This document shows, in pieces, positions 1-41,850 of a DNA stretch of 64,000 nucleotides. Position 1 is the stretch's first letter; every line of letters starts with the position of its first letter. Position numbers and translations under genes: made by a program. The notes beneath the pieces were generated by a model. That model searched no databases, was not told the origin of the DNA, and saw only the letters and a program-made list of their open reading frames with translations. This stretch comes from Oikopleura dioica (Eukaryota; Animalia; Chordata), in contig OU015568.1 in assembly GCA_907165135.1 (NCBI GenBank), forward strand, positions 8,432,001-8,496,000, given 5' to 3'.

Positions 1-3000
1 GTTGTTGATCTTTTGCATGTCATCTGGTTTGTCATTGTCCGTGGCCTGTCCGTTCTTTTTGTCAGTGTCCGGTTCCCGCTCAGCTTCAAGAATTGCCGCG
101 GCTGTAATACAAGAGTCGCAGTTAGAGACAACTCGCTCGTGGGATTTTTCAATGTTGACTAACTCAACTGCAGTGTCAACTGCAGCCTCGATCTTCACAG
201 CGTTGTTGTTGTTCGTGTTTGGGTTGGTTTCCTCGAGTTCATATTCCTTTTCCATAGTGGCGGGCTCGACAATAGCGACGGTTTCGCCATTGAGGTCAAA
301 GTCCTTGTCGTTGTTGTTGTTAGCGTTGGTGTTGTTGGAGGCGTTCTGGCCAAAGAGAGAAATGCTAACGTGGCATTCGGTCTTCTTGGCGCCAACTTTG
401 GCAGTGTAGACACCAGCATCCTCTTCGCAGATTGTCTTCTTGATGATCAAGCGGCGGATATTACCGTCAGTGACAAATTCAACGTTGTCAGACTGCTTGA
501 GTCGCTAAAAACGGAGTTAAAATTTGTTCGTTTTGTAAATTTGTTTACCTGTCCGTCCTTCTTCCAGTGAATGTTGTCGGTGTTGTTGGAATTAACTTCA
601 ACTTCGAGCTCAAGAGAAGGAGCGGCGATCTCAACTTCCTTGAATGGAGGAAGTTTGGCCATGAAGACCTGCTTAGCAAGCTTTGCAGCAGCCTTGGCGG
701 CCTCCTTGGCAGCTTCTTTCTCGGCGTTGTCGATTTGAGGACGCTTTCGCATCTCAAGAACGTAGTGCTCGACCTTGCCAGTCTTTGGAGCACCCCACTT
801 AAGAGTAGCAGTAGATTCTCCAACTGCAAGGACCTCTGGTCGACCTGGTCGGCCAGGAACAGATTCGGGATCCTTGGCGACTTCAGGCTCAGAGGGCTCG
901 GACCAGATACCAAGACCGGCCAAGTTCTCAGCACAGACGCGGAAGATGTAGTCACGGCCTTCTTTGAGGTTGGTGACCTTGAACATTCGCTTGCCAGATT
1001 CAATAGCCTTCTTGTTGATTCGGCTCCATCGGTTGGAGTTGGGCGAGGACATTTCGACCCAGTAGCCGGTGATTGGAGATCCACCATCCCATTCAGGCTC
1101 GGCCCATTTGATGGCCATACCGTTCTTAGAGATAGAAGTGTCCAAGACCTGTGGGGATCCATTTGCTCGGGCACTTCGAACAAGTAGCAAGCAACAATAG
1201 GAGCGGAAAGAGCACCGTCACCCATTCCGATGTCGTTTCGAGCAGAGACTCGGAACTCGTATTCGCGTCCTTCGACAAGTCGCTCGGCCACGTAAGAAGT
1301 GGCGTCGGGCTTAACGTCAGCGGACATCTTGCCCCAGACCTGTCGGCCGACTTCTCGCTTTTCAACGAGGTAGTTTCGGATAGGAGTTCCACCAGCATCC
1401 TTTGGCGCTTCCCAGATAAGCTTGCAGCTCTTCTTGGTGATATCAGTGATATCAAAGTTTTCTGGGATACCAGGTCGATCCATGACATTGACGGAAATGC
1501 GCTTTTCGGCCTTGCCGTTATCGTTCTCAGCAGTGATGATGTAAATACCACTGTCAGATCGGTTAAGGTCGTTCATCGTGAAGGTAGAGGACTTCTCAGT
1601 ATCCTTGATGCCGACTCGAGAGTCGACGGAAAGTGGGAAGCCATCCTTGACCCAAGAGATCTCAGGCTGAGGTTTACCCTGGATTTTGGCGGGCATGACC
1701 ATTCGGTTCTGAGTGACCTTGACGTCGAGGCCGTTTTCGGCACCTTCCCAAAGCTCGATTGATGGTGGAACCTTGTCCATCTCGACAGCAACCCATTCAG
1801 TTGGTTCGCATGGCTCGCCTGGGCCAGCTTCGGAGATGCACTTGACTCGGAATCGCCATTTGGACATGTACTCGAGTGGAGTAACGAGACATTCGGGCTT
1901 CTTGGATGGTTTTCCAGGGCTGAAGACTTGGTAGTAAATCTCTTCTTCCTTGAGCATCTCAACCATGTAACCACCAGAGGCAGTGACGGGGGCAGATGCT
2001 GGAGGCTCCCAAGCAAGAGTCACGGAATCGTTGGTTGTCTTGACGACTCGAAGGTTGGAAACGACACCTTGAAGATTAAGTTTATCAAGTGTTGTTGAAG
2101 ATCTATGCGGTTTTTGTAAAAACCAGGGGCGTATCTCAACTCAAGAGAATTCAAATCGTGAAGCTGCGAAGATCGCCTGCGATCTTCCAGTAAAGGAGCC
2201 ATTTTATGCTCTGTTTAGTCTCTAGTTTTAAATTTGCTAAATGTAAATTTAAGGACGAGGTCTAGGACTAAATTAAATACTAATTAGCAGCTGTAAGGAT
2301 CACCCCTCGTGATCCACTCAACAAGTTTAGATTGAGAATATTTCTTGAGCTGAGATTGACGACAAAAGCAAACCACACTCTAATACTTAGAATCTAAGTA
2401 AAAGCCTAAAACAAATTAAGCGTAAATTGCTTATTGTGGTGTGGATTCACAACCGGGATCGGGATAAAAATATTATCCTCGTGTGCATAATAAATTTCCA
2501 ATGGTGTTTGTGCGTGAAATAGATTTTGGTGCTCATCAAATTCAGTGAATTTGTGCATTTACCAAAGTCTTCGCTACATTGCACCATCTGATCGCGGAAA
2601 TTTCCGGATAAACGCGATACTGTGCTGCTGCAAGTATCAAGACCTTCTTGGGGTCTACCTGCTGGCACAGATTCCGGTAAGGGTTTTGGTTTTTCTTAAT
2701 AGAACACGATTTTCACAAGAAAATTGGTTTAGCTTAGAAAAACACGTTACGCTTTGCCCTTTTTAGGGCTTTTGGCATTTCAGCTTCGAAAGGTACTCTG
2801 AAATAAGCGGCGTAAAATAAGCGGACTACTATTTTTACGGCTATTTAATTATTTTTGCTTCTAATCTTAGATCGATTTTTTTTATATCAAACTTACCACC
2901 GCCATAGAAGACAGGTTTCTCGTACTCGGCGAATTCACCCTCTCCAGCACCATTGACGGCAGCGACTCGGAACTCGTAGCTATTGTTCAATGGAAGATCA

Positions 3001-6000
3001 GAGAAGGGGAAAGCTTCGCCACTTGGTCGGCCAGATTCTTGCCAGATTGACGATTCAGCCTGCTTGTGCTGGACGATGTATTCCTTGATTGGGTCTCCAC
3101 CGGACTCAAGAGGCTTGGTCCAAGTGAACTCGAGAGTGTTGCCAACCTTGACATTCAAGTCTGTGCAGAGGCCAGGAGCGTCGAGAACAGAAACCTTCAA
3201 AGCGAGTCGTTTTTCACCAGCTCGGTTTCTAGCGACGATTTCATAATCACCAGAGTCACCTTCAACAGCAGCGGGAACGGAAATGTTAGCGAAACCGCCA
3301 CCATATCGAGCATGTTCGAACCAAGGCTCACCGTTCTTCGTCCATTCAACTTCGCATTTAGGTCGTCCAACGACCTTGATCTTGGCCTGAAGTGGCTGGC
3401 CCTTGACAACCTTGAATACAGATTCTTCAGCGACAAGGTTGGGTTCAATGTCGGGAGCTTCGCCAGCGAGAGTGACACATGGGTTGGAAACTTCAGATGG
3501 CATGGATAGGCCTTCCTTATTCTGGCCAAAGACTCGGAACAAGTACTTGGTATCAGCGACAAGATCTTCGATCGTAGTAGCAGATTCGCCAGCTGGGCAG
3601 ATGCCAGCCTTAGCCCATGCATCAGTGCCATGCTGAAGGGCCTCAATGATGTACTGGTCAACTGGGTTGCCAGATGGCGCGGTCCAGGAAACGTCGATGC
3701 TGCTGTTAGTTGGATTCTGGGCGGTAACACCAGTTGGAGCGTCAGGCTTGTTGTTGGGGTCTTCGGCTCGCACCTGAGCGGATGGCTCAGAAGGACCGGA
3801 AACACCAGCGCTGTTCTGCGCCTTGACTCGGAATCGGTACATTTTGCCCGCCGAAACTTGGGTGACATCGAAGCTGGTAGAAGCAGATTCGCCACATGGC
3901 TCGAAGCTGTCAGCACCATCAATGCACTTTTCGACGATGTAGCCAGTGATTGGAGCACCACCGTCGGTAGTTGGGGCTTCCCAGGAGAGAGGAACCTTAT
4001 TGGCTCGGACTCCACCCTGGTCGATCTTGATTCCAGTGGGGAATCCAGGTGGGAAGACACCGTCGGTGATCTCGTTGGGGCCAACAATGTCACAGAATTC
4101 ACCCATACCAGCTTTGTTTTCGGCAGCGACGCGGATTTCAATGTGTTCGCCCTTGGTGAGTTTTCGTGCAACAAAAGCAGTCTCCTCAACAGCGACAGTA
4201 GATCGAGTCCAGTCTTCAGACTCAGTCTTGTATTCAACGTGGTACTTGATAATAGCAGCGCCACCGTTGTCAGCAGGGGCGTTCCAGCAGAAGCCACAGG
4301 AGTTGTTGGTCATTCGAGTGACAGTGAGGTTGACTGGAGCAGAAGGCTTGTCCACAACAAAAACGTTGATAACAGCACTGTCATCGCCATTCTCGTTCTT
4401 GGCGGTGATTGTGTAGGCACCGGCATCAGATCGTTCAACAGTAGCGAAGTTAACAATTCTGTTAACCTTGACTTCAGCATCGCGTTCAACAGTCATTTCC
4501 TTGCCAGTATCAGCATGAACAACAGTGACGTCGGCAACCGGCTTGCCCTTGACTTCAAAGGTGAACTTGTCAGCCTGGCCGCAGAGGATGTAAGCATCTT
4601 CGGAAGAACCGATCTTAGGTGCAGTACCCTTGGACTCAACAGACATGGTAGTAGAAGAAGTCTGGAACTCCTTGAGTTCTCCAGCAAGAGTCACTTCAAT
4701 CTTGGCTTCGTCGTCATCAACAGAAGCAACGAAAGAAAGGGCGAATTTGCCCTCATCAGCAGTAACTTCGTATCGAGAGTCGGAGATTTCCTTTCGGTTC
4801 ACGTACCAGGTAGCATCAGCAGCCTTGTTAGCGTCGACTTCAAAAGTGACCTTCTGACCTTCCTTGCCAGACCATTTGGTAAGTTCCTTCTGAATCTTGA
4901 GGTGTTCAATGACCTTCAAGGCGCATTCAACTGGTCGGTCTTCATATCCAACGACGTGGCATTTGACCTTGCCAGTGTGCTTAGCAGCAGCAGACTTGAT
5001 GACAAGTTTTCGGTCAAAGCCAGATGCAGGAGGAGTAAAGAACTGATCATCCTGAGTTTCGTCGTTCACAGACCAGCCGCAAGCAGCAGAAGACTCCTTA
5101 GTTCGAACTTCAAAAGCAACTTCGTCTCCGATAAAGACGGTTTTGTCCTGTGGCTCAGTATCGAATGGAGAGTCTTGGACAGTAACCTTGCCGAAAGTAT
5201 CAGAGCCACCGATGAGCTGGCAGGTGTATTTGCCAGAGTCTTCCATCTCAGCATTCTTGATGGTAAGAGATCGGTTCTTTTCGTCTTGATCCATGAAAAA
5301 TTTATCGCCAGCGGTGATTTCAGCGTCATCCTAGTTTTGATTATATATTTTTTCAAAAGCAGATGCCTCTTACCTTCTTCCAGATGACTTTGGCCCGTGG
5401 GGAAGAAACAACAACGGAGAGAGTAGTCTCTTCAGCGCCAAGTCGAACGGTTCGGTCGGAGAGTCCAGATTCGAAAACGGGAGTGAGTTCTTTAACAGTT
5501 ACTTTAGCTTCAGTGTGCTTGTCGCCAGTTTTTGCCATCCACATGCCAGTATCAGAGTACTTGGCTTTTCGGATGGTGAGACTATGGCTACGCCCGTCAG
5601 CAGTAATCTTGTACTGATCAATTTGATCGGTGCCGATTTGTTTTCCGTCGTGATACCAAACGACTGGAGCTTCTCGGAGCTTAGCATCCGAGTTTAACTT
5701 GCAAGATAGCGTAGCGCTATCGTTTTCGAGGATCATTTCATCGACAAGACCTTCCACGAATTCAATCTCCAGAGCTAAGGAAAAAAGTTCTAGCAAAGAT
5801 TCATGAACTTAGTGATAGATGAGAAGGTAGGGGGTATGAATTTCGATTGACAGTAATAGTAATCGAAAAGATTTTAATTTAGCATAAGGATTGCCACATC
5901 GATCGAAACGATCAGAAAATTCATCAGTCTTCCTTTGGTAATCGAAGATGATGAGTGTATCCTTTATGAGTGAGTATTTTGAATCGGTGCAACTTACGAG

Positions 6001-12000: not shown

Positions 12001-15000
12001 TTCCGAATTTTCGGGATGGGAAGATTTCAGCGCCGTTGACGAACCACTGCACGTTAGCGTTAGCTCGGCTGAGTTCACATTCAAGCTCAACAGAGGCCAT
12101 TTTGTTTTCGGCCTCTTTGTCTTCGAGAGCTTTGGTGAATCGAAGAGCAGCCTGGTTGACCTTGACCTTGGCGAGAGATCGAACACCTGCGGCGTTGAAC
12201 ATAACTTCAGAGTTGTCCATGATGTTGGAGTTGGCAATCTTGAGAGTGAAATTAGCACCCTCAGACTCCATAGTAACTCGAGGAGACTTAGGAGTAAGTT
12301 CCATGCCGTTCTGGAACCACTGAGTTGGTTTGATATCGGGAAGATTGAGTTCAACATTGAAAACAATTTCGTCTCCCTCGGTGACTTCCAAGTCGCTGAG
12401 GCTCTTGACAAACTCAACTGCAACAGTTTGAACAGTAAGAGCAGCGGTAGTTTTAGCATCTTCGGCCTTGCAGCTGTAGTTAGACTCGTCATTGTAGCCA
12501 ACATCGGAAATGGTAAGAGTTCGTTTGAGTCCGTCAGCGGCCATTTCGTACTTGGGGCCGGCCTTGATCTCATCCTTGTTCTTATACCACTTGACTGGAA
12601 CATCTCGGGAGAGAGTACATTCGAATGTTGCAACCTTGCCTTCTGCAGCACCCGCATCCATCATGTTAGAAGTGAAAGAAACAGGTGCATCCTCAACAGT
12701 CAAAGCAGAGCCAGCAGAGAGGTCGTTGAGGTGAGCAGCGTACTTTTGGCATCATTTTTGGTAAGATTGTGAACGGTAAGTCGTCGCTTTCGACCGTCCT
12801 TCTGGATAGTGTATTTACCATCGACTTGAGCAATTGGCTCGCCATCGGCGCTCCAGGTGACTTCAGCATCAACGGAGGAAACACTGATCTCATAGACAAC
12901 ATCTTCTTTCTCAGTGGCAAACTTGTCTTCAAGCTTGGAAGTAAACTTGATGTCCTTGGTAACAGCGAGCTGAGCTTCACATCGAATGTGTTCAACTTCA
13001 ACAGCGATAGTTCCGGCCATATCCATGGAAACATTGTCCATGATGCAGGTGAGAATCTTGCCTTCGTTTCTTAGGACGCTATCGCCTCCAGAAGTGATCT
13101 TGTTACCGTTCAAAGTCCAGGTGACCTTTCGAGATGGCTTAGAAAGCTCAACGAAGAACTCAGCAGATTCTTTCTCGCCAACTTCGGTGTCTTCAAGAGC
13201 GCGAACAAACTTGAATGCTTCGACACAGATTCGTCCAAAAGTCTTGGCATCAGGAGTGGCGCAGCAATATTCACCGGCATCAGAAGCCTTGACGTCTCTA
13301 ATTTCGATCTTTCTGTTAGTACCGTTAGCCTTGACGCTAAGTCGGTCGGTGTCGGAGAGTTTCTTCCAGCTGTTATCAAGCTCGTATCCTTCAACAGTAC
13401 CTCGGTAAACTGGCGGAGGAGTGTAAGTCATTGCTGGAGCAGCAACAACCTTGACATTGGCGGATGATTTTGTACCGTCCTTGAGAGTAGCAGTGTAAAC
13501 ACCACTGTCACTCTCGTCAGCATCAGCAATAGCCAAAGTTCGTCGGTAGCCATCAGTACCCATTTTGTACTTGCCACCATCCTGAATCTCCTGGCCGTCC
13601 TTGTCCCAAACAACGACGAGCTCGGGGAAGTTGACATCGCAGCAGAGCTCGGCAGTCTGGTTGATTGGGAACTCCGCATCAGAGAGCTCATTGGCGAAGG
13701 CTGGGCCTCGGTAGTACCAACTGACCTCGGTAGTTGGAACTCCAACCTCGCAATCGATGAAGACGCATTTGTCGTTCTCTTCGGCATGGGTCTCGGCTTC
13801 GATTCCCTTTGCGAATCCAGGAGCAGCTAAAATAAAAATGATATAAAACTAGAAAATATAATTCATGAAAAAATTTGAAACCGTGAAATGTATAATTCTT
13901 GATGTATACATTCGAAAATAGCGCAGACGCAATAAAAAAAATCTGCAATGTGAACATACTGGTTTTCAGATTGGCCTTGGTCGAGGCAGTCTCGCCTGCC
14001 TCCTCAACTGTGCAGACAACTTCGTAGTTATCTTTAACACCGTCACAGTCTTCGATTGTCAATTTCCTGGTAAAGCCACGAGAGGTAACTCTGAACTTGG
14101 CGCTATTCTGGACCGGCTTTCCACCAGCAGTCCATCTAGCAACTGCATCCCGGCGAGTGACGTTTGTTTCAAAGCGTGCGGTTTCTCCAGGTTTTACGAT
14201 TTGATCGTCCATGTTTAGAGTGAATCCAAGAGGCAAATCTTTTACATTGAGCGAAGCCTTCTGCTTCGCTTGGTTGCCTAGAGCAGAAAAAGTAATTTCT
14301 CCAGAGTCGTCAACAGTCTGTTTTCGCAAAATAAGTCGATATCGTATTCCACCCTCAACTTGCTCTTCCAGCATTTCAACGTCATCGCTTTCCCGGAGAG
14401 GAGCGCCATCTTTCTTCCAAAGAGGTTCAGCGTTTTTTGAGTTGAGAACCGTGTCGAAAATAGCATCGCCATCGAGTGGGCATTCAACGTTGGCGAGAGA
14501 CTTGATAACCTTGAGCTCGAGCTCGTTCACCTTCAACGAAGCGCTGGTCTTTTCTTCTCCCATTTCGCAAGAATATCGTCCTGCATCGTCGAAAGTGGCA
14601 TTTTTGATGACAAGCTTTCTCGCGCGACCTGTAAAAATGAGTATTTGGAACATGGAAAATATTACCTTTAGATTCGAAATCGTATTCCGCAGCAGGTCGA
14701 AGTTCTCGGTCGCCCTTGAACCAAACAACAGGAGCATCAGGATCGGAAACAGAGCATTCAAACTCAACTCGGTCTCGTCGATTCTTGACAAGGTCTCGGA
14801 GTGGAGAGTCGAATCTCGGTGGTGGAGCTATGTTTGATATGATATCCATTTTTAAGTGATTGACATTGAGATATCTGCTATGTCTTGGAGAATTTCTTCC
14901 GTGCCATTTGATGCAGGAAAATCAATAATCATGAATCGAGATTCTTGATTATTGAGACGCAATTCGTGTCTTTAACTGACAAAGTACTGTGACTTTGAGT

Positions 15001-18000
15001 GTGTACTTTCTTCAATCTTGATAAAAAAATAATGATCAAGATTGGTTTCCTTGGACAATCTGAACCAGTTGTTCACATTGAAGATTTAAGCGTGGTTTTA
15101 TAAGAAAGCGGGAAATTAAAAATAGCATTGTGTTGTTTACCGTTGGCGATGACTGTCAGTTTTGCTAATGTTTTGTAGTTTATATTCAGAAATGATAAAG
15201 TTGCAATAATTGAGTGTACAGTCACAGAAGGGAGGCAAGATCATCATTCACAGAGTAACTGAAAATGATGTATGGACGACTTGAAAGATATTTTTCATGC
15301 TTTTTCATCGAAGAAGTCAAAATATCGCAATTATCAAAGTCCTCCACATTTCTTTACATCCCAAACTGCTTCTACGAAATGAGAACCATTTCGGAAAGTT
15401 ACCACTGGTTGCAATGAGCAAGTCTCGTTGGCTACCAGTCGATTTGCCAAAATCCATTCTGCAGGTGACTTCGCCTTCCAAGAATTTCTTCGCAGTGAGT
15501 GACAATGAGTGTCCACCCTTTCCATCTTCTTGGACGTTGAAGCTTGAAGCTTTGTCACGTGGGTTGATGTACGTAACTCGATCACTTGAATCCTAAAAAC
15601 TGTTTTATTTATAGAATCAAGGGAAGATAAGCTTACCCTGAAATACCAGACCACCTCTTGATTCGGATCGTCGATTCGACAAATGAAATTGATCTTCTTT
15701 CCTTCATCAACATGTTGATCTTCCAGATTCTTCAAAAATACTGGTGGCTCATAAAGCACTTTCAGTTGCGCTTCAGATTTCGCCTTTTCACCATCTTCGT
15801 TTGACACCTCGACCGTGTATGTTCCAGCGAATCGTTCAATCGCTTCGTCGCATTCCAGAGAATGCTTGTTTCCCTTTGATTTGACAGCAACAAATGGGAA
15901 TTTTTGCCCTTGATCCGTTCTGTAATATTCTGCCATTGTCTTGTAGATCGGGATCTTTTCGCCATTCAAGTACCAAGTCGCTTCAAGGTCGGCATAATTC
16001 GTCGTTGATGAAAAGCTGAATTTCGTTCCCAGCATCGCTGATGTAGATTTCAACTCCTTGACGAATGAAATTGGCTCTCCTGGCGGTGGAGTTGGTGGAG
16101 GAGGAGTAGGAGTGCGTGGCGGCGGAGGTGGCGTTTTTGGCCGCTCGACGGGTGTCTTCGGTCGTTCTGGTGTTTTTGCTCTCTCTGTGTGTTGAATTTA
16201 GATTTAGAATTTGGATTGTTTTTTTTTCGAAATTTTAATTAAAATATTTAATCATGAGGATTTTCCATTTGATTGAATTCATAAACAGTAAAAGAACGAT
16301 TCCAGATACTTGATGATTCACCATGTACTGGTCGCGGATTTTCAATTGAACCGAGAATTCTCTCAGTAATTGAAGTCATCGCCAACGGATTAGTTTTTTT
16401 GTTTGTTTGTGGTTTGGTTAGTGGGTCGTGTTGGGAGGAAAAGACATTTCGTGAATGACTTTTCGGAGAATCATTAAGTCGTGAGCAAAATGATTGACAA
16501 AAAATGTTCTTTTTGTCGAGCGTTGGAAAATGGTAAATTTGCGGAATGAGCGTTTGTGCGATTTGTGGCAGTATTTACCCTTTGATTTCTGGGGAGTTTC
16601 CGACAGAACTTCTGGTTCGGGGGAAACTCTGTTAACTAAGGCATTTGATTAAGTAACTGTCAGTAAATTCTTGATATAAATGCAAGATATCGCATCACTT
16701 TATTTTTGATTATATTCTTACCACGCTCAACGGGTTTCTCCTTCTTGATTTCAATAATAGGCTCGGGCGATGGAACTGAAAAGTGATGATTGATAAACGT
16801 TAAAAGCGAAAGCGATAGTCGGACTAGCCTGACCAAAAAGATGTGCGTATCTTTTTTTTAGGCATAAAATTTTCTTTTATGCCTGTTTTGCTTATGAGGA
16901 GCGCATGGATCATATGGAGGTGCTACGAATAGGATTTTGCTTATTCGCAAAAGAAAATCTTGATAACGTCTTCTATGTTATCAAACTTGGTGATTTTGGC
17001 GGATGCGCAAAATTTTATGGCGTTTTGTCTTACCACGTGCACTCTCAACTTTTTTGATTTCTTTCGGTTTAGGAATCTCCTCTCTCGCTAAAAAAAAATC
17101 TGTGAAGAAATTGTCATAAATGCGAAGCGAGCGATAGTTTACATAATATCAGAGCTATATTATGTGACTGGATGAGCGATAAAATTTAAATGGCCCATCT
17201 AATGGGATTGAAATGGGAATTAATTCCATATAAGAATTTTATTTGGAATCTGGTGAGCGGTGGAGCTTACCGGGCTCGTCTATCTGGACGGGGGACTGTG
17301 GTTTGGGAACTTCCACAACCTTAGGTTTTGGCGGAACTATAAAATTCAATTTAATTAATTTGTACTCAAAGAAGCGAAATGAATCCGAAGCTTTCAGTGG
17401 TCCTTGTCACACTGTGTGCTATCATAATAATAATTATGATAAAATATGGAAGTGACTCTGTGTGTGCTTTGAAAGAAATTTTCAAGGCCTACTAGAATGG
17501 AAGCGATGATGCTGGTGCACAAGAATCCGTGGGGATTTCTTAAATGCAATGATGCTCATCTTACCCTCTTGTTTTACGATAGTTTTAGGGGGCGCAGTTT
17601 GAATTTCCTTCTTGATTTCAGTTTTGGGAACAGGGCTTTGCCTGTTACTGACTTTTACAGGTGTTTTGGCCTGTTTTTGCGGCGGCTTGCGTGACTCACC
17701 CTTTACTTCAAGATTGGCGGTAGACTTGGCTGGGCCAGCTTCGATGCGGTATTCACCCTTGTCCTCTTCGGTGACGTTCTTGATAACCAACGAGTGGCTT
17801 TCACCATCGTGGCTCATGTGGTACTTCTCGCCTTCTTCAAGTTGAGTGTCCTCCTAGAAATAATTGAAATCTGGATCTGCTGTAGAACTGCACAAACCTT
17901 GAACCACTTGACGTCGACGTTAGGAACATTGATGCGAATCTCAGCTTCAAAGATAGCATCACCCTGGGCAACAGCAATGACATCTCGAATATCCTGGAGA

Positions 18001-31993: not shown

Positions 31994-34900
31994 TTAGAAG
32001 GAAGTATTGTCGACGGAGATGAAGATTTCGAGACCAGGCAGAGGGTTTTGCAGATCGCGCCGGATGGTGTCTACGTTGTCAGAAAGAATTCCAATCACGT
32101 CATCGTCAAGAGTGCTGATGCCCTTGATGACAAGGTTGTAACTTCCGGAATGGAGGGTGTTGAACTAAAAATATCAATTTTTCAAGTGATTTTTTCGAAA
32201 ATTCTTACTTTATCCTTTGAAACAAGAAGAGTAGCATGAGTTTGATGCTGAACAATCTTGAAGATTCCTTTTCCATTGCCGCTTTCCACGTGATACCGGA
32301 CATTTTGCTTGAGAGGTGAGTGAGAAGGAACGAGCTCCAGAAGCTTCATGAAGCGAGTTGGTTCGTTGAGGTAATCAGCTCGAGTCAGATCGATCTATTT
32401 TAAAATATGAGTAATCCTTTTTTTCTAGTGAATTCTTTGTTACCTCAATTGGTACACCTTCGATGATTGCGGCTTGTGGATCCATGCTGTCAACGATAGT
32501 CGTGATGTTCTTCTCAACATCTCGTCTGTATCGTTTAGCATGACGTCTGCTGTGGCAAGATCCACCGTAGCATCGTCGTTCTCCGCCAATGACTCGAGCA
32601 GTTGCTGGGCCTCGTCCGGCAGGCTTACCCGCGTTCCAGCCCTAAAAAATAATAATTAATTTAGATTTTCTGACAGGTTCTCTTACCCGATGGTAGCCAG
32701 GCTGAGTAAAGCTACGCTGAGTTGAAATACAGTAGCCATTTCCAGCTTTGTAAGAGTCAGGTCCACAAGTGCACGAGTAGTTTCCATCTTCGTTATCACA
32801 ACCGTTTGAGCAAGTTCCACCGTTGATCTGGCATTCATCTACATCGGAGCAGCCTTGGCCTGCATCTCGGTAGCCACTTATCTTTTAATAGTTATCAAAA
32901 GAACTGGAAGCTTACGCTCTGCAGTTGCACTGGAATGATCCGCGGAAGTTGTTGCAGACTTGGCCAGCGCCGCAAGGAGAAGAGTTACATTCATTGACAT
33001 CGACACATCTTCCTCGGAAGTGCATGTAACCAGGTGGGCATTGTTGCGGGCATCGGAATCCTCCAGGGGTGTTGAAACAGCCAGTTGGGCAGCCATATCC
33101 TAAGAATCGTAAAGCTGGCTTGACGCTATTTTGTTAACTTACGTGATTGACATTCGTTGAGATCAACGCATTCATCACCACTATCGTTGAGTCTATACCC
33201 GCGCTTGCAAATACAGTGGAACGAGCCAGGGTCATTAACACAGATACCGCGTGGACCACAAATGTTAAATTGCTCATCGCACTTTGGTAAACGCATTAAA
33301 CACATGTATTTTAGTCACTAACTCCCACCTCGTTTCGATCAACACAAGCATTGTTGCGCTTTTTGTAACCCATTGGACATTCGCACTCGTACGATCCGAT
33401 GGTATTGGTGCAAATGTATTGACAATTGTTGTTCTTTGTCCTAGAAAATGGGCAATTTCAAATCGGCTTTTGCGAAAGAAAGGCTTACTTGCACTCGTCG
33501 AGATCTACGCAAACATTGTCAATCATTTCGTAACCCTCTGGACAAATGCAATCGTAATCGCCATCGGTATTTCTGCACATAGCTGGTGATGGACATTTAT
33601 GGGCGTCGGTAGCGCACTCATCAATATCTACAAACTCAATAAAAATCTCCTTCCATCATGCTTATCATACCAATGCACTTGGTGCCAGTTTCGTCGATGG
33701 TGTAGCCTGGGTCGCACTCACAAGTAAAGCCTGGTTGATTGTTCACACAAATACCATTCTTAATTATATTTTTATCAAATAGTTTTGAGGAATAACTCAC
33801 CTCGCAAGCGTTCGGCACAACATCACAGTCATTGATTACATTTCCATTCTTGTCATATCCGATTCCAGCTGGGCAGAGTTCTCGGAAAGCGGCTGAGTCC
33901 TTATCGGGACACGATCTGCATTCGACGGCGTTGTACTTTTGAGCTCGTCCATCGCCCCAGCCAGCACCATGTCCAGAGCAGCAGCATTCATCAAATCGAA
34001 CAGCGGCGGAAGACATTGTTGCGGATGTCTGGAGGCACATTCCAGAGACCTTTGTTGTGTAGCACATAAATTCACGAGAATCTTAAAATATTATTTTCGG
34101 TTGAAATCTGCAGGTCAAATTTACCATCACACTTGGTCATATCATTGTTGGCCACAAATCCAGGTTTGCATTTGCACCAGTAACCTCCACCGTTTGGCTT
34201 ATTGATACAGGTTCCATTGTCGCAAAGGTCTGCGTTTTCAGCACATTCGTCAATATCTATTTTTCATAAGTCAAGGAAACTAAGAAAGAAAATCTACCTT
34301 GGCATTGATCAGTGACAGGATTTCGTCGCATTCCATTTGGACATTGGCAGACGTAGTACCCGACAAAATTCTTGCAGACTTGACCCTTGAGGGCACATGG
34401 ATCAGGGTTTCTGAAAAGAGGATAACTGCAAATGAAAAAATAACTTGATATTACTGAGCGCATTCGTTGATATCCTTGCAGTGTCGACCGTCTGGTTTGA
34501 GTTCGTAGCCAGATGGACAGAGGCAAGAGTACTTTCCATTTTGTGGTGTTTCGTTCTTGCATCGGTATGCACACTGATGAGCACCAGTAGCACATTCATC
34601 GATATCTAAATTTTGCACTTTAAACAATTTATAGGATTTTAATACCTTGGCAGGATCCGTTAGGGCCGGTTGGTGCATATCCATCGTCGCATTCACAAGT
34701 GAAACCACCTTCGTCATTGAAGCATTCGCCTCGACCGCAGGGATTAACGAGAGCACTGCATTCATCAGTATCTTAAACTTGTTAGCACTTTGTTGTTTCT
34801 TGATTCAAGCTTACCGACACAAGTGGTGCCATCAGCATCGAGATGATATCCCTTGCCACAGTCGCATTTGTAGCTGCTATCTGTATTGACGCAAGTTCCG

Positions 34901-37900
34901 TTGGTACAAGCAGTATCAATCAGATCGCACTCGTTGATATCAATTGGATGTCCATCGGGTCCGGTCGACATTCCGCAGCCTTCTGGGCACATTTGGTTGA
35001 AAGCTTCAGATCCCTCGGCAGGACACTTTCCGCAACCTCCTCGGTAGCTCCAACTGTTATCGCCGTTACACATGCAGCAGCACTGGCTCTGGGTGAGAAG
35101 CTGTCCGAGAGCATCGTTGTTGCAAGATCGACTTCCAACAAAACATTTGCCTTGGCGCTCATCGAAGCAGTCAGTTCCATCTGAGGTTTGTGTATAACCA
35201 TGGGGGCAGTGGCATTGGAATCCTCCTTCAAGGTCTTCGCAGTGACCGTGCGAGCAGAGTCCAGGAACAGTCTGGCATTCATTGATATTGACACAGCTCT
35301 CGCCATTGAAAGTGTAACCTGGGTCGCATTGGCAGGTGTAGTTCCCGTTTAGATTAATGCACTCGCCGCTTACACATGGATTGCCATATTCCTCGCACTC
35401 ATCAACATCGACGCAAGTTCTGGAATCATCACTGACTTGGAAGCCATCATCACAGTCGCACATGAAACCGCCAACAATATCGACACAGTCACCATTTTGA
35501 CAGATATTGTCATGACCGGCAAATCGCTCGCACTCATTGATATTGACACAGACTTGGTCTTCGCGATCAAACTCATAACCTGGATTGCAGACACATCTAT
35601 GGCTTCCTTCAAGATCGATGCAGTGTTTGACAGCACCGGGAGATCCACAAATATTAGGGTAGTCGTTGCATTCATCAATGTTCACGCAGCTCTTGCTGTC
35701 ATTCTCTGGCTCATAACCGTTGTCACATTCGCAGTGGAAGCCGCCAACAGTATCAGTACATTTTCCGTTAGCACATGTTCCTTCAATCATCGAGCACTCA
35801 TCGATATTGACGCAGACACCATTTCGCTCAGTAAAACCGTCATCGCAGATGCAATCGTAGCTTCCTTTTTTGTTGACGCAATGGGAGAACTGTGGACATT
35901 TGGTGTTAGGATCAGCACACTCATCGTTATCAATACATTCGTATGAGCCTGGTTTGAGAGTCATTCCAGGTCTGCACTCGCATTTGATGTCATGTCCGGG
36001 ATCTTCAATACAGTAACCATCTCGGCAGAGGTCTGGAATCTGGTCACAGGCAGATTTCGCATCCTTACAGAAAGCAATTCGATCATCTCCTTGAGGACAC
36101 TCTTCACAGCTATCTCCCCAAGCTTTTCCAAGGTCATTAGCGCAGCAGCAAGCCTTTTTGGTTGCCTTGAAGCTGAACGCATTATCGCATGATAGATTCA
36201 TAAAAGGGTTGTAAGATTTGAAGCACTCGCCCATTCGAATATCTTCGCAGGCTCGGCCGTCTTCTGATGGGATGTATCCGTCTTCACAAACACACTGGTG
36301 GTGGCCTAGCTGATTGATGCACTGACCAGGTCCACATGGGTTTTCCTCGCTTTCGCACTCATTGATATCGACACAGTTTCGACCAGTGTTGTCGAGCTCG
36401 TAACCATCTGGGCAGTTGCAATCGTAGCTGCCGTCCAAATTTCTGCAGTTTCCTCCTTTGCAAGCGCCAGCCATTGCTGAGCACTCGTTAATATCCTTGG
36501 GAATGAGTCGAATGCTGTCGGGTTCAAAACCAGGGCCAAAGGGGCAAAGCTGAAGGTGCTCAGCAGATCCAATAGCTGGACAAACTTCGCAGGTACTTTC
36601 GATTGTGTCTTCAACTTCAGCCCATCCGAAACCAGCACCAGAGCAGCAGCACTCGGCTCGTCTTGTGTTTGGTCCAATAAGATCAGAGCATGTTCCGTAT
36701 TCAACTTCAGCGTAGCAATTTCCTTGTCTCAGGTCGACGCATCCGCTGCCTCCTGGAATGTAAGTGTAGTTTGGTGGGCACTCGCAAGTAAATGAGCCGA
36801 TAGTATTTCTGCATTTTCCACCGAGGCAGATGCTAGTATCTTCAGTTTCTGATCGACATTCGTTTATGTCAACACACTGGTCACCTTCGTCGTTCAATTC
36901 ATAACCTTCGTGGCATTCGCAAGCGTAAGTTCCGTCCATGTTAACACAGTTTCCGTTCCTGCAAACTGGTTTATCTCCTTTGCACTCATTGATGTCCTCA
37001 CATCGCTTGCCATTGTAGCTTGGAGTATATCCGAATTCGCACTCACAGTTGTAGTCACCAGGAGAGTTGACACAAACTCCATGAGGTCCACAAATGTTTG
37101 GATCTTGGTCGCAGTCCATAACATCAGCACATTCAGTGCCGTTGCCAACGTATCCAGGGTGGCACTCACAGTTGTAGCCGCCAGGGATATTGATGCAATC
37201 AGCGTTTGGATGACAACCATGAGTATCCGCTTCACATTCGTCGACGTCAGAGCAGTCGACTCCGTCTCCGTCGAATCCAGTCTGACAGTGGCATTGGTAC
37301 GTACCAACATTATTATTGCACTCTGCATTAGGAGAACAAATATGAGTTCCGAGCTCACACTCGTTCTCATCATCACATCGGCTTAGATCAGGAGAGATAC
37401 AGAAACCATCCCAGCAGTCGCATGTGTAACTGCCTTCCGTATTTGTGCACTTTCCGTGAACGCAAATATCTGGATTGATATCACACTCATTTACATCGAT
37501 GCAAAGCTGTCTGTTTGATACAAGCTCGTAGCCGGGGATACAGTGGCATGTGTAAGATCCTTCCAAGTTTTCGCATTTTCCGCCGCCGCAGATAGCTGGC
37601 TCTTCAGAGCACTCGTCGACATCAATGCAATCGAAACCGTTAGGAGAGAGCTCAAAGCCATCTCGGCAAGAGCAGATGAATGACCCTTCTGTATCGGTAC
37701 AGCGCTGCTCACATCCACCGTTGTCGTCCAAACACTCGTTAGTATTGACACACCCTTTGTTATCAGGAGTAGGTTTGTATCCGCTGTGACACTGGCACTT
37801 CCAATCGCCGATAAGATTGATACAACGTCCATTGATGCAAGGCTCAATTTGCAAGTCGCACTCGTTATCATCCACACAAGTCACACCATCATCAGCAAGG

Positions 37901-40900
37901 TGCGTATTTGGAGGGCAAGAACATTCAAAACTTCCCTCGGTATCGGTACAATTGCCACCTCCCAAGCAAACATTGTTCAAACACTCATTATCGTTGACAC
38001 AGACGCCATCGTTTCCTAAAACGTAGCCGGGTTTGCACTTGCACTTGAAGCTTCCTGGAGTGTTGACACACTCTCCTTCACCACAAGCATCATCTCCAAG
38101 AAGAGCACATTCGTCAATATCGACACAAGGGAAGCCCTTATCAGTTGTTCCAAATCCTGGAGCGCATTGACAGAGATCCGAGGGATCTTCAGGGTTGAAT
38201 TTACATTCGCCGAACTCGCCACAAATTTCAGGAAATTCCAAGCAGTTGTTGATCTGTTTGCAGTTTTCTCGGTCATTCGGGTTTGGATTGTAGCAATTTC
38301 CATCAGCACAGGGACAGAGTTCATCATACTCTGGAGTTCCTTCTCGTGGGCAGGCTCGGCATTCATTTCCCTCGCCCCAAGCCTCACCAGCAATAGAGCA
38401 GCAGCAAGTCTGTCGAGAATGGAGACCTTCCCATGCATCGTGGCAGAATGGATGAGTTGCATTGAAGTTGGGGAAACAGACGGACTTTCGTGTGTCAATA
38501 CATCGTCTTCCAGAATCATCGAGGGTCAAGCCGTTTGGACATTCGCAGTAGAAAGATCCATCAGTGTTAACGCATTTAGCGCCGTTGCCTGAGCAGTACT
38601 GTGGGAAAAGCTGGCATTCGTCAACTTCGACGCATCGGTCGGCGACTCTGTCAAAGACGTAACCCTTTCTGCAAGTAAGAGGAATCTCACTACAGTCGAC
38701 GCATTCGTCACCCCATGCTTTACCCTGAGTAGCACAGCAGAGCTCAGCAGTGTATCGGCCAGGAATATTGTCAACGCAAGTGTCATCTTCGTGCTGAAGC
38801 CAGCAAGCTTCTTCTCTCTTGTCGAGACAAATGAGACCAGTTGAATCAAGAACAAGTCCAGGAGCACAAACACATTCGAATCCTCCAGGAGCATTTATGC
38901 ACTGGCCGCCAGAGCAAGGTCGCTCGAGACATTCATCGTCGTCATCGCAGCTTCCGGTTTTATCGTTGAAGTGATGTCCACTTGGGCAGACGCATTCGAA
39001 GCTGCCGTCAAGCTCTGTGCAAAGACCGTTAAGGCATTTTGTATCGCATTCTGGGGTGTCAATACAAAGAGTTCCAGATGGGTGCAGCTCGTATCCCTCA
39101 TCACATTGACACTCGTAGCCTCCATCGACATCGTAGCATTGACCGTTGTTGCCACATGGATTGAGTTCCAAATCGCAATAACTGTCTGGCTTCTCAGATC
39201 CCTTGCAAAGCTCATTGAAATTTGATGTTCCTACTGCAGGACAAACATCACATTTGTTGTTGAGTCTGAATGAGGAAGTTCGGTCGAGTTCAGCGGCGTG
39301 GCAACAGCAGTCTTGTCTTGACATCTGGTTAGGAAGCATGCTGTCAGCAGCACATTTACGTCCATTCTTGTTCGATGATCTGAAACACTGGCCATTTGGC
39401 TGGTCGACACATCTTCGACCAGTAGCATCAAGCATCTGGTACTTCCCGCATTCGCATTTGAAGTCGCCGTCGGTGTCAGTGCAGGTACCACCCTGGCAAG
39501 GATGGAACTCGCATTCGTCGATATTCTCGCAAATTCCTTGCTCAGGATTGTATTTGTATCCCTTGTTACAAGCGCATCTGTATGAGCCGGGGGTATTTTT
39601 GCACTCGCCATTGATGCAAGCATGGTCATTAGCGCACTCATCGATGTCATGGCAAGATTTGCGGTCTGGTCCTCGCTCGTAGCCAACTTCACAAACGCAC
39701 TGGTAGTCTCCAATTACATTTGAGCAAACTCCGTTTGCACATTTGTTTCCGCCGATATTGCACTCATCGATATCAATACATTTTTGGTTTCGCTGAAGAG
39801 GGTCAGGCTGAAAGCCTTCATCGCACGCACAAGCCCATGTACCATCTCTATCAATGCATTTTCCATTGGCGCACTGAGCAAGACCTTCAGCGCACTCGTC
39901 GATGTTCTCGCACTCCTGGCCATTTCCGCTTGGAACGTATCCAGCATCACATTCACAGTACCATCCTCCATCGGTATTGACACATCGTCCGTTATCACAC
40001 TGTCCTTCTCCAGTTTCGCATTCGTTTATATCGCGGCACTGGAGATCAACAGTTTCAGGTTCGTAGCCATTATCGCAAAGACACATTGGGATGCCCTTTT
40101 CATCAGTGATGCAAACGCCCTTCTCACAAAGTCCCTTTGACTCGCAGATATCAGTGATTGGGTCAGGTCCGGAGCCATCGGGTCCAAGATTCTTGGGATC
40201 AATAGTCTCAGCATTATCGCAAAGCATACTGTAAGCTTCAGTTCCAACAGTTGGACAGTTGTCGATTCCAGAAGATTCTTGGCCTTGAAAGCATTGACCA
40301 GGGCTGGAAGCGAAGTTGCCAAGGCAGCAGCATTGAGTTTTTGTGAGCATTTTGCTCAGAGGATCAGTGCAGACGCTGTTTGAAACATGTTCAAAACAGG
40401 TACCTGGTCTGTTGTCAATGCAAGTTTGTTTGCCATCTTGGTCCACAGTCTTGATGTATCCCTCAGCACAGTCACAAGAGTAGCCTCCAGGAAGATTGGT
40501 GCATTCATTATCAGATCCACATGGGCTGTCAGCGCACTCGTCAAGATCGAGACATTCGTTTTTGTCTTCATCAAAGTAAAAACCTTCGGGAGCGATGCAA
40601 ACGAAGCTTCCGATCGTATCTCTGCATTTACAACCCTTGCAAATTCCGTTGATATCAATACACTCGTTAATGTTATTGCAGTTTGAGTCATAGCCGCGGC
40701 CGCAGTTACCAGGTCGAGCTGGGCACTCTTCGCATGGATCTCCCCACGCTTGTCCGACTGTGGCACAGCATTGTTCTTTCGTTGAGTATTCGGATAAAAC
40801 TTGACTAGAGCATTCGTTTTTCGCCTTGTCAATCTTTCCGAAACAAGGTCCTCTTCGATAGTCAACTTCGCAGTTATCTCCATAAAATCCATAGACACAG

Positions 40901-41850
40901 GCACACTTATCAACTCCAATACATCGACCACCATTTCTGCAGCCACTTACTCCATTAGTACTTGCCCCGCAAATAGGTTGACCACAGTGAGCACCGGTGA
41001 AACCTTCTGGGCATTCGCACTCGCCGTTGATACATCGCCCGCCATTCTGACAAGGACTCGAGCAGCGGGCTTCCGTCTCGAAGAATTCGTCCTCGTTACA
41101 GCGCTTTCGGAGCTTGCCATCGGCACAGCGGCACATGCCAGGACTGTGGCAAATTCCATCGCCACACGCGTTCGGAGCGCAAATCGGAATATTACACTCG
41201 CTGGATCCTTTATGTTGTCTCCAACCTGCGCAGCAATATCTTCTGTCTCCATTGCCGCAAACATGAGGGCCCGTTAGACTAGATAATGTTAGTTTATGGG
41301 GATTTAAGGACTTAGGGATTTGGGACTGCGCCTTTTTGTAGGCTCAAAGAGCCGTTCAGGCGTGGAGCCAACGCATCAAACAGAACACAACAATGTGCTT
41401 TTTTTCTTTGTCAACTCGACCCAAAGAGTGTCTCATCAAAGTTGAAAAAGTAAACATTTAGTCCAAGGTCATTGACAATAGTGGGATTAAATAAGAACGT
41501 TTTAGTGAAATAAGGTACTCACGGCTCTGTGGTTCCCCAGCGTCGACGGCGGGTCCCGTCTAAGCGACGATTTCTTCTTGTTTTGTATGCATTACGACCT
41601 TGACGACGGCCTGGTTCTCTGAGTTCTCTAAAAATGGGTAATAGTTAAATCGAGGTCAATGAACTTTTATGACATTTTTGGTTTATGAAATAAATGATCA
41701 TTTTATGATATATAATTCATTATTTAATTATTTTTATAAACAAATCAATTTTATAATCTTTTAAACATTTACATAAAAAAATATTGATAAGGTTGACTCC
41801 TACCTTTGTGCTAGTGCAAGAGTGCCTATCAGTAGTAAACGCCAGCGCAT
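31994..41850 (-). CDS. FBN: Fibrillin, complete (signal peptide, N-terminal furin site, EGF x3, 2 hybrid domains, 7 TB domains, ~44 cbEGF-type repeats, C-terminal furin site and unique domain)
   Basis: ATG at 41850 ([14 protein letters not shown]), exon 2 ending [10 protein letters not shown], a 6464-nt exon 41278-34815, then 14 short GT-AG introns to TAA at 31994. [15 protein letters not shown]-terminal domain, D[IV][DN]EC cbEGF consensus, CCC-containing TB domains in vertebrate fibrillin order (including 12 cbEGF between TB3 and TB4, 7 after TB7). Confidence 0.96.

What the first reader, a model, noticed from the sequence alone, without database searches (positions are those of the whole stretch)
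13215..13826. An entire Ig domain nested inside another Ig domain, flanked by 8-bp direct repeats
Seen: host strands A-C (APGFAKGI..CVFIDCEV..EVSWYYRG) are followed by a complete I-set Ig (PAFANELSD..AELCCDV..VVWDKDG..RRTLAI..DSGVYTATL..SSANVKV), a linker (APAMTYTPPPVYRG TVEGYELDNSW), and only then host strands D-G (KKLSDTDRLSVKANG..RKIEIRD..DAGEYCC..GRICVE). The same octamer (TACCGAGG on the minus strand) lies at 13706-13713 and 13400-13407, exactly 306 nt (102 codons) apart. Removing the interval restores a normal Ig with a modest CD loop. Known: titin Ig domains are normally strictly tandem; MyBP-C C5 has a CD-loop insert but not a whole domain. Inference: a microhomology/TSD-type in-frame insertion making a branched Ig with distinct unfolding mechanics. 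Alternatively the segment is an exitron (GC...AG at the repeats).
Basis: partly seen in the sequence, partly recalled or inferred. Interest (0 to 1): 0.78.

Follow-up and report, generated by a model that had tools for sequence, protein, structure and literature searches.

The report
Conserved Ig-within-Ig domain in larvacean titin
A titin-like muscle gene of the larvacean Oikopleura really encodes one complete immunoglobulin bead placed inside the loop of another, split bead; related wild larvaceans keep this layout, so it is an old, selected design and not a recent insertion, a splicing leftover or an assembly error.

Summary
On the minus strand, one exon (13826 down to about 12703) encodes Ig strands A-C (41 aa), then a complete I-set Ig (89 aa), then a 23-aa linker, then Ig strands C'-G (51 aa).

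- **Halves:** they map to complementary parts of Ig profiles. The linker matches nothing.
- **Conservation:** the layout is collinear and nearly gap-free (one extra codon in the closest) in independent marine-metagenome contigs at 89% and about 55% identity. A third lineage (about 50%) shows the guest and C-half.
- **Selection:** every segment is under strong purifying selection (dN/dS 0.05-0.15).
- **Structure:** AlphaFold2 gives a compact two-domain model (pTM 0.69). When the C-half is left out, the N-half strands disappear. No coordinates could be inspected, so co-folding of the halves is inferred, not seen.

The TSD/microhomology reading is not supported. The octamer follows from the YRG...YRG residues plus codon bias, has a third copy nearby, is 7/8 in the close relative, and is absent at protein level in distant relatives. 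The exitron reading has a poor 3' splice site and no RNA test.

The insertion point coincides with a recurrent intron position after strand C in this gene. The closest analogues are the split Ig-like domains of bacterial RTX adhesins and of lipin.

The parts
13827..13959 (-). Phase-1 intron (133 nt, GTATGT...TTTTAG) before the exon that carries the nested unit
   Evidence: Sequence read. The join gives ..LKT-T-APGF, which matches ..LKVTTTAGF in relative P0001, where the ORF is continuous.
13705..13826 (-). Host Ig, N-terminal half: strands A, A', B, C (aa 1-41, ending WYYRG)
   Evidence: Window Ig profile positions 10-35, 9.9 bits, 0 of 200 shuffles reach it. Pfam Ig_3 positions 11-38 of 78, E 0.078. 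BLASTP to residues 1-38 of other Igs in the gene. dN/dS 0.147. 16 invariant residues across relatives, including the strand-C Trp.
13438..13704 (-). Guest: a complete I-set Ig domain (aa 42-130)
   Evidence: Pfam I-set, 51 bits alone. Window profile positions 2-91, 85.8 bits. AlphaFold2 pLDDT 86-96. VIA-align Z 16.0, rmsd 1.2 A over 89 residues to obscurin Ig32 (2yz8). dN/dS 0.072.
13369..13437 (-). Return linker (aa 131-153), Pro-rich, then the motif YRGTVEGYELDNS. It is the most conserved stretch of the unit and matches no Ig profile.
   Evidence: It adds no score to the Ig profile (26.3 bits with it, 26.5 without, shuffled linker 25.5 +/- 0.5). No Pfam match (protein 4). 13 of 20 residues between 135 and 154 are invariant in four lineages. 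dN/dS 0.083. AlphaFold2 pLDDT below 50 for aa 141-149.
13216..13368 (-). Host Ig, C-terminal half: strands C', D, E, F, G (aa 154-204)
   Evidence: Pfam I-set positions 40-74 of 90, 23.5 bits, E 5.7e-5 (protein 3). Window profile positions 38-83, 26 bits. BLASTP to residues 44-91 of other Igs. dN/dS 0.052.
13706..13713 (-). Octamer TACCGAGG at junction 1 (codons Tyr-Arg-Gly)
   Evidence: In L002 this copy reads TACAGAGG.
13400..13407 (-). Octamer TACCGAGG inside the linker (codons Tyr-Arg-Gly), 306 nt from the first
   Evidence: Conserved in L002.
13725..13732 (-). Third copy of TACCGAGG, out of frame with the others (codons Thr-Glu-Val)
   Evidence: It shows that this word is common in the exon.

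Best explanation
The exon encodes a split-host, nested-guest pair of immunoglobulin domains within the tandem-Ig part of a titin-like gene of a larvacean tunicate. The chain makes strands A-C of a host I-set Ig. It then leaves at the C-C' loop to form a complete, autonomous guest Ig. It comes back through a 23-residue, highly conserved, Pro-rich linker, and then makes host strands C'-G, which complete the host sandwich together with the first 41 residues.

Shown: the layout, its coding status, its age and its conservation. Inferred: the co-folding of the two halves.

If the halves do co-fold, the line of tension in the filament runs through the host's A' and G strands. The guest would then hang off the filament axis as a side branch. 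It would feel no force until the host has unfolded, giving a fixed host-first unfolding order and a larger first length gain.

An Ig has its two ends about 4 nm apart, and an Ig set into a short loop cannot stay folded together with its host. The long linker is therefore best read as the strap that brings the chain back to the host so that both can be folded at once.

The unit is old and arose by a single insertion of an Ig-coding segment at the C-C' position. That position is also where this gene repeatedly carries phase-0 introns, so an Ig exon landing in such an intron, followed by loss of the flanking introns, is the most likely origin. The 8-bp repeat is a by-product of two Tyr-Arg-Gly triplets, not a footprint of the insertion.
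For: **Layout and complementarity**
- Window Ig profile: positions 10-34, then 2-91, then 38-79.
- The same pattern appears in L002, P0001, P0002 and P0073.
- Pfam: Ig_3 positions 11-38 for the N-half, I-set positions 40-74 for the C-half, nothing for the linker.
- The linker adds no Ig score, so the C-half cannot be a whole domain on its own. The N-half is significantly Ig-like.

**Reality and age**
- There is no second copy in the genome.
- Independent contigs share the layout without gaps: JGI contig L002 at 89%, and ENA/Logan clusters P0001 (11 members) and P0002 at 54-57%. P0073 at about 50% has the guest, linker and C-half.

**Selection**
- dN/dS is 0.147, 0.072, 0.083 and 0.052 for N-half, guest, linker and C-half, at dS 0.7-1.8. 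A 41-residue half Ig cannot fold alone, yet it is conserved, so it needs a partner.

**Structure**
- AlphaFold2 on the 207-aa unit gives pTM 0.69 although the guest is only 43% of the residues, with N-half strands at 21-27 and 36-40.
- The control without the C-half loses both strands, pLDDT falls from 67/73 to 56/60, and pTM 0.62 fits the guest alone.

**Origin**
- Phase-0 introns sit right after strand C in three other Igs of this gene. The closest paralogue of the N-half is one of them.
- The ORFs of relatives stop being Ig-like at the same site.

**Geometry and analogues**
- PMC5133956 describes a titin Ig placed in a short loop, which leads to mutually exclusive folding.
- PMC10865825 and PMC7066176 describe natural split Ig-like domains.
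Against: - No coordinates or contact map of the model could be read, so pairing of N-half strands with C-half strands is not directly seen.
- Host pLDDT is only 57-73 and the linker is below 50. Three of the five models scored about 60.
- The alignment has only about four effective lineages.
- In P0001 and P0002 the N-half is barely Ig-like by profile (-2.1 bits).
- BLASTP can force the linker plus C-half onto a whole Ig with three gaps. A very degenerate whole domain is therefore not excluded by sequence alone.
- P0073 shows no N-half in its ORF. This may be an intron or a true absence.
- No RNA or protein data were available.
- Function and mechanics are inference.
Confidence: 0.65

Rival explanations
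1. The two halves do not co-fold. The N-half is an orphan remnant of a truncated Ig (or a strand donor to something else), and the linker plus C-half is a shortened, degenerate Ig of its own. The chain would then still be beads on a string.
For: BLASTP aligns linker plus C-half to whole Igs of a tandem-Ig protein with three gaps: A-strand-like P.MTYT, EG, YEL, and a Trp followed by KK. Trp154 is invariant. The N-half profile score is weak, especially in P0001 and P0002. Host pLDDT is moderate.
Against: The linker adds nothing to the Ig profile score compared with shuffled linkers and has no Pfam match. 23 residues cannot supply strands A, B and C. An orphan half Ig would not be kept at dN/dS 0.15 with 16 invariant residues. 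In the AlphaFold2 control the N-half strands depend on the presence of the C-half. Two complementary deletions flanking one Ig are less parsimonious than one insertion.
Confidence: 0.17
2. The 306 nt behave as an exitron, or an alternatively spliced in-frame interval (GC...AG at the repeat). The animal would then make both a plain Ig and the nested form.
For: The length is a multiple of 3. The one possible cut gives GC...AG in the window and GT...AG with 309 nt in L002. A pyrimidine-rich run from the Pro codons lies before the 3' cut. Larvaceans are known for non-canonical donors (own knowledge).
Against: The acceptor is CGAG, with G at -3 in both lineages. The four introns read here all end in TAG after a T-rich run. 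The donor GCCCAG is unlike GTAAG or GTATG. The interval is strongly constrained as protein (dN/dS 0.07-0.08), with one clean codon indel. The protein searches found no product lacking it, but their length filter makes this weak.
Confidence: 0.08
3. A recent microhomology-mediated or transposon-like insertion, with the 8-bp repeat as its target-site duplication.
For: Identical in-frame octamers lie 306 nt apart at the borders of the removable interval.
Against: The layout is shared by lineages at 47-57% identity, and dS to the closest relative is already about 0.8. A neutral 8-mer would have decayed. The repeat is 7/8 in L002. Junction 1 reads FRP or FRA in distant relatives. The 8-mer match arises in 42% of codon shuffles, and a third copy lies 19 nt away. 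No close donor Ig exists.
Confidence: 0.04
4. An assembly artefact: a mis-join or a collapsed repeat.
For: The reference does carry at least one small error-like indel nearby, at 12745/12746.
Against: The same contiguous order is found in at least four independent metagenome assemblies.
Confidence: 0.01

Closest known systems
Split Ig-like domains of bacterial RTX adhesins (MpIBP, FrhA)
   Same: An Ig-like sandwich in a long rod of tandem Ig-like beads is discontinuous in sequence. It carries another domain that buds out sideways from the axis (PMC10865825).
   Different: Those are bacterial BIg-type domains that are extracellular. The guest is a sugar- or peptide-binding domain whose two ends lie close together. 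Here the host and guest are both eukaryotic I-set Igs in a cytoplasmic muscle protein, and a long return linker is needed. There is no sequence relationship.
Lipin/Pah split immunoglobulin-like domain (N-Lip + C-Lip)
   Same: Two distant sequence segments co-fold into one Ig-like sandwich (PMC7066176).
   Different: The intervening sequence there is a long, mostly non-Ig region in an enzyme. It is not a mechanical chain and the guest is not an Ig.
Cardiac MyBP-C domain C5, with an insert in the CD loop
   Same: It is an I-set Ig of the sarcomere with extra sequence at the same loop.
   Different: That insert is a short disordered loop of about 30 residues, not a folded domain.
Engineered domain-insertion proteins (GL5/I27 and related constructs)
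   Same: A titin Ig is placed inside a loop of a host domain. Force reaches the guest only through the host (PMC5133956).
   Different: These are artificial and have a short loop, so host and guest cannot both be folded (mutually exclusive folding). The natural unit here has a 23-residue conserved linker that should allow both to fold.
Integrin beta hybrid domain with the inserted beta-I domain; nested domains of Gram-positive pilus adhesins (RrgA)
   Same: These are beta-sandwich hosts with a whole domain inserted in a loop (own knowledge, not checked here).
   Different: They belong to different families, are extracellular, and in integrin the guest is not an Ig.
Vertebrate titin and obscurin tandem I-set Ig domains
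   Same: The guest matches them closely: Z 15-16, rmsd 1.1-1.4 A to titin I10, I27 and I82 and to obscurin Ig32. The gene has the tandem-Ig then Ig/Fn3 order.
   Different: In the best 150 hits of a full HMMER search, no protein outside the larvacean-like relatives covers the N-half, guest and C-half in one stretch. Those proteins are strictly tandem.

Membership tests
I-set immunoglobulin domain (PF07679): the guest | A contiguous match to the profile above the gathering score | tested here: met
   51.3 bits against a cut-off of 23.7, profile positions 1-80 of 90 (protein 3).
I-set immunoglobulin domain (PF07679): the guest | An I-set beta-sandwich fold | tested here: met
   AlphaFold2 pLDDT 86-96. 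Z 16.0, rmsd 1.2 A over 89 aligned residues to 2yz8.
I-set immunoglobulin domain: the host (both halves) | A profile match above the gathering score | tested here: inconclusive
The C-half scores 23.5 bits against a cut-off of 23.7 (positions 40-74). The N-half matches only Ig_3 at 13.9 bits, E 0.078. The window's own profile gives 9.9 and 26.4 bits on complementary positions.
Split (discontinuous) Ig-like domain carrying a nested guest | Two separated segments map to complementary, non-overlapping parts of one fold | tested here: met
   Profile positions 10-35 and 38-83 in the window. The same split appears in four relatives.
Split (discontinuous) Ig-like domain carrying a nested guest | The two segments co-fold into one sandwich | tested here: inconclusive
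   pTM is 0.69 for 207 aa, and the N-half strands are present only when the C-half is present. No coordinates or contacts could be read.
Split (discontinuous) Ig-like domain carrying a nested guest | The intervening segment is an autonomous folded domain | tested here: met
   The guest folds with the same confidence in both models.
Titin/connectin-type giant muscle protein | Long tandem I-set Ig array followed by mixed Ig/Fn3, on one strand | tested here: met
   62 Ig matches on the minus strand between about 31.3 kb and 0.3 kb. Fn3 plus I-set below 5.3 kb.
Titin/connectin-type giant muscle protein | A C-terminal kinase and Z-disc/M-band modules in the same gene | not tested
   These lie outside the window. 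Earlier notes of the scan place a titin kinase about 1.2 Mb away, in a separate gene piece. This was not checked here.
Exitron | Lies inside a coding exon with a length that is a multiple of three | tested here: met
   306 nt here and 309 nt in L002.
Exitron | Usable splice sites at both ends | tested here: not met
   The donor is GCCCAG and the acceptor is CGAG, with G at -3. The introns read in this gene use GTAAG, GTATG or GTTTG donors and T-rich acceptors ending in TAG.
Exitron | Spliced and unspliced transcripts both observed | not testable with these tools
Insertion with a target-site duplication | Flanking direct repeats beyond what the coding sequence explains | tested here: not met
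   42% of synonymous-codon shuffles give such a repeat. It is 7/8 in L002. A third copy exists.
Insertion with a target-site duplication | An empty site in a related lineage | tested here: not met
   Every relative found carries the guest.

The most novel reading that the evidence does not exclude
Larvacean titin contains a natural 'mechanical hierarchy' module. A guest Ig hangs off the spring as a force-shielded side branch of a split host Ig, held by a conserved return strap. The guest is exposed to force, or releases a partner bound to the invariant strap motif, only after the host has unfolded. This would be the cis form of a wider habit of this animal's titin of breaking beta-sandwich domains after strand C. 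Other examples are the half Fn3 domains at gene ends noted elsewhere in the scan, and an Fn3 at 1-875 of this window that is interrupted after strand C. All may have been seeded at the recurrent intron position after strand C.
Probability: 0.3. Interest if true: 0.75.

Novelty: new variant of a known kind. Interest (0 to 1): 0.55.

Why it matters
Titin-type springs are thought of as strictly linear chains of beads, and their mechanics are modelled that way.

A conserved bead-within-a-bead would be a natural example of what protein engineers built artificially to control the order in which domains unfold. It would also be a natural answer to the geometric problem of putting an Ig, whose ends are far apart, into a loop.

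It offers a small, well-defined construct of 207 residues for single-molecule pulling and structure work. It also links domain insertion to intron positions in a genome known for rapid intron turnover.

It is limited to larvaceans so far and rests on prediction, so its weight is moderate.

Tried and rejected
1. **Second copy or haplotig.** A DNA search of the window's own genome found only the locus itself.
2. **The look-up of encoding contigs for P0001 and P0002.** No DNA of the distant relatives could be read, so their junction codons and introns are inferred from ORF ends only.
3. **Structure searches with the full model** (Foldseek pdb, pdb_via, pdb_via_wide). The guest fills every list. 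The searches say nothing about the host and found no solved nested Ig-in-Ig.
4. **Full HMMER search of 1.84 billion representatives**. The list is swamped by giant tandem-Ig proteins. Only P0002 and P0073 are true relatives.
5. **Second word search, seeded from P0001**. It found no further lineage and no empty site.
6. **ESM Atlas**. It returned generic I-set clusters only.
7. **Linker as a degenerate A-B-C.** BLASTP suggested this. It was rejected by the profile and shuffle test and by Pfam.
8. **PPxY motif in the linker** (PPPVY). It is not conserved, since the relatives read PPEKY or PPEQY, so it was dropped.
9. The C-half query and protein 2 were out of frame. They were redone (protein 3). 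One search failed on a term that was too short.
11. **Human contigs.** None was met.
Full report
**Where and what**

The window is G000:C1:8432001-8496000 of a 64.3-Mb, 19-contig genome. Earlier notes of the scan call it the larvacean Oikopleura dioica. The minus strand from about 31.3 kb down to the window's start carries a titin-like gene. A profile search finds 62 Ig matches. Pfam finds I-set arrays and, below 5.3 kb, mixed Fn3 and I-set. A separate fibrillin-like gene lies at 34.8-41.3 kb.

The finding lies in the tandem-Ig part of the gene. Its exon starts at 13826 after a 133-nt phase-1 intron. It runs in one frame to about 12746. There the reference has an apparent 1-nt frameshift relative to a close relative.

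**Check of the observation**

The parts, with coordinates, are:
- 41 residues ending WYYRG (13826-13705)
- a complete Ig of 89 residues (13704-13438)
- a 23-residue linker (13437-13369)
- 51 residues from WKKL to ICVEA (13368-13216)

TACCGAGG is at 13706-13713 and 13400-13407, 306 nt apart.

**Are the flanks two halves of one Ig?**

The profile evidence says yes:
- Pfam I-set matches the middle domain at profile positions 1-80 of 90.
- A profile that I built from 29 Ig domains of this window matches the exon in five places. Three belong to the unit: aa 13-38 to positions 10-34, aa 43-133 to positions 2-91, and aa 154-196 to positions 38-79. The other two are the next two ordinary Igs.
- Taken alone, the N-half scores 9.9 bits (best of 200 shuffles 5.3) and the C-half 26.4 bits.
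- The linker adds nothing: 26.3 bits with it, and 25.5 +/- 0.5 with a shuffled linker.
- Pfam agrees: Ig_3 positions 11-38 for the N-half, I-set positions 40-74 at 23.5 bits for the C-half, and no match for the linker.
- BLASTP against the other Igs of the gene puts the N-half on their residues 1-38 and the C-half on their residues 44-91.

Each core element of an I-set domain therefore occurs once across the two flanks. These are the strand-B hydrophobic run, the strand-C Trp, strand E, the DxGxYxC of strand F, and strand G.

A BLASTP alignment to a tandem-Ig protein can stretch the linker plus C-half over a whole Ig with three gaps. The profile and shuffle test shows that this carries no signal.

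**Is it real and old?**

The genome holds no second copy. Independent assemblies carry the same order:
- JGI marine-metagenome contig Ga0115008_10001462 (L002) is 89% identical in protein and about 88% in DNA. It has the same upstream acceptor and one extra codon in the guest.
- ENA/Logan clusters P0001 (11 members on several contigs) and P0002 are 54-57% identical. They align over all 204 residues without a gap. Their ORF runs on from the preceding Ig, so they lack the window's intron.
- P0073 is about 50% identical and sits on an 850-nt contig. It has the guest, linker, C-half and the start of the next Ig. Before the guest it has 31 unrelated residues, most simply an intron at junction 1.

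The relatives show the same complementary profile coordinates. Assembly artefact is therefore excluded, and the event predates a deep split.

Against L002, dN/dS is 0.147 (N-half), 0.072 (guest), 0.083 (linker) and 0.052 (C-half), at dS 0.7-1.8. All four parts are constrained as protein.

The linker is the best conserved stretch of all. 13 of 20 residues between 135 and 154 are invariant in four lineages.

**The octamer**

Both in-frame copies encode Tyr-Arg-Gly. The evidence against a meaningful repeat:
- Shuffling synonymous codons while keeping the protein gives an in-frame 8-mer at the two junctions in 42% of trials.
- In L002 the first copy is TACAGAGG, so the match is 7/8.
- In the distant relatives junction 1 reads FRP or FRA, while junction 2 keeps YRG.
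- With dS near 0.8 even to the closest relative, a neutral footprint could not have survived.

The repeat is therefore not evidence for a TSD or for microhomology.

**Exitron**

Only one cut is compatible with the repeat. It gives GC...AG here and GT...AG with 309 nt in L002. The acceptor is CGAG, with G at -3. The four introns that I read in this gene use GTAAG, GTATG or GTTTG donors and T-rich acceptors ending in TAG. The interval is strongly constrained as protein. I rate the exitron as unlikely but untested.

**Fold**

AlphaFold2 on the 207-residue unit, with the relatives as the alignment, gave these values:
- mean pLDDT 71.8 and pTM 0.69
- guest pLDDT 86-96
- N-half strands at 21-27 and 36-40, pLDDT 67-73
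- C-half strands at 163-166, 171-177, 185-190 and 195-200, pLDDT 57-71
- linker residues 141-149 below pLDDT 50

The guest superposes on titin and obscurin Igs: Z 16.0, rmsd 1.2 A over 89 residues to 2yz8, and Z 15.5 to I27 (1waa). The guest is only 43% of the residues, so a pTM of 0.69 requires that most of the host is placed rigidly relative to it.

As a control I predicted residues 1-135, that is the N-half plus the guest without the C-half. The guest was unchanged. Both N-half strands vanished, pLDDT fell to 56/60, and pTM 0.62 fits the guest alone. The N-half's structure in the model therefore depends on residues 136-207.

The tools give no coordinates, so the pairing itself is inferred. 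Structure searches were filled by the guest and say nothing on the host.

**Origin**

No Ig in the window is closer than 33-46% to the guest, so there is no recent donor.

The insertion point is three to four residues after the strand-C Trp. At least three other Igs of this gene carry a phase-0 intron at that same position:
- WYFR|gtaagc at 15.6 kb
- KWFK|gtttgt at 17.85 kb
- IWKK|gtaaga at 5.35 kb

The Ig at 15.6 kb is the closest paralogue of the N-half, at 42% over 38 residues. In the relatives, the ORFs of P0001 (ending QWFRG) and P0073 (ending INW) leave the Ig pattern at the same profile position. P0073 enters the pattern exactly at the guest's start.

This fits an Ig exon captured in, or duplicated into, an intron in the C-C' loop, with later loss of the flanking introns. 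It may also only mean that this loop tolerates both kinds of interruption. It is circumstantial.

**How it most likely works (inference)**

In an I-set Ig the C-C' loop lies at the end of the domain where the C-terminus leaves. The guest would therefore bud off next to the junction with the following Ig.

Tension passes through the host's A' and G strands, so the guest is off-axis and shielded until the host opens. Engineered insertions of titin I27 into a short loop force host and guest to fold mutually exclusively, because the Ig's ends are far apart (PMC5133956). Here 23 conserved residues can span that distance, which explains why a long, constrained linker exists.

Natural split Ig-like domains that project a guest sideways from a rod of tandem beads are known in bacterial RTX adhesins (PMC10865825). 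A split Ig-like domain is also known in lipin (PMC7066176). I found no report of an Ig inside an Ig in titin-type proteins. No such layout appeared outside the larvacean-like relatives among the best 150 hits of a full HMMER search. Neither search is exhaustive.

**Context from the scan (unchecked AI notes)**

Other agents report that this animal's titin is split into several genes that begin or end halfway through Fn3 domains, one of them after strands A-C. In this window, 1-875 shows an Fn3 that is broken after strand C and followed by an Ala-rich helix and an Ig (only glanced at). The present unit would be a cis version of the same kind of break.

**Verdict**

- The nested layout is real, coding, conserved and old (confidence about 0.95).
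- That the halves co-fold around the guest is likely (about 0.7).
- The mechanical role and the intron-capture origin are reasoned proposals (about 0.4-0.5).
- The TSD reading is rejected. The exitron reading is unlikely.

This is a new variant of a known kind (the split or nested Ig-like domain) in a new setting, a muscle spring protein.

Noticed in passing
window 12745-12746 (minus strand, A-run): There is an apparent 1-nt deletion in the coding exon relative to the 89% relative L002, which reads straight through (AAGAAG against AA-AAG). Both sides are conserved coding sequence. It looks like a homopolymer error of the assembly rather than an intron.
   Followed up: partly
window 15604-15650, about 17810-17853, about 5331-5375 (minus strand): Three Ig domains of the gene are split by short phase-0 introns two to three residues after the strand-C Trp. 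This is the position where the guest Ig sits in the finding. ORFs of wild relatives (P0001, P0073) also break at this position.
   Followed up: partly
window 1-875 (minus strand): An Fn3 shows only strands A-C, followed by an Ala-rich helix, an Ig (itself split by an intron) and Asn-rich sequence that runs off the window. This is a second beta-sandwich interrupted after strand C in the same gene, and it is the same as first-reader note s1-411170.
   Followed up: partly
window 34768-41343 (minus strand): A 2192-codon open frame holds about 20 calcium-binding EGF domains and 4 TB domains. It is a fibrillin/LTBP-like gene directly upstream of the titin-like gene.
   Followed up: no
window 13405-13419 (minus strand): The linker contains PPPVY, which fits the PPxY pattern of WW-domain ligands. 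Distant relatives read PPEKY or PPEQY, so the motif as such is not conserved.
   Followed up: yes
L002:2992-4190: The 89% relative shares the upstream intron acceptor of the nested exon. Its dS to the window is about 0.7-1.8, so it belongs to a deeply separated lineage, not the same population.
   Followed up: partly
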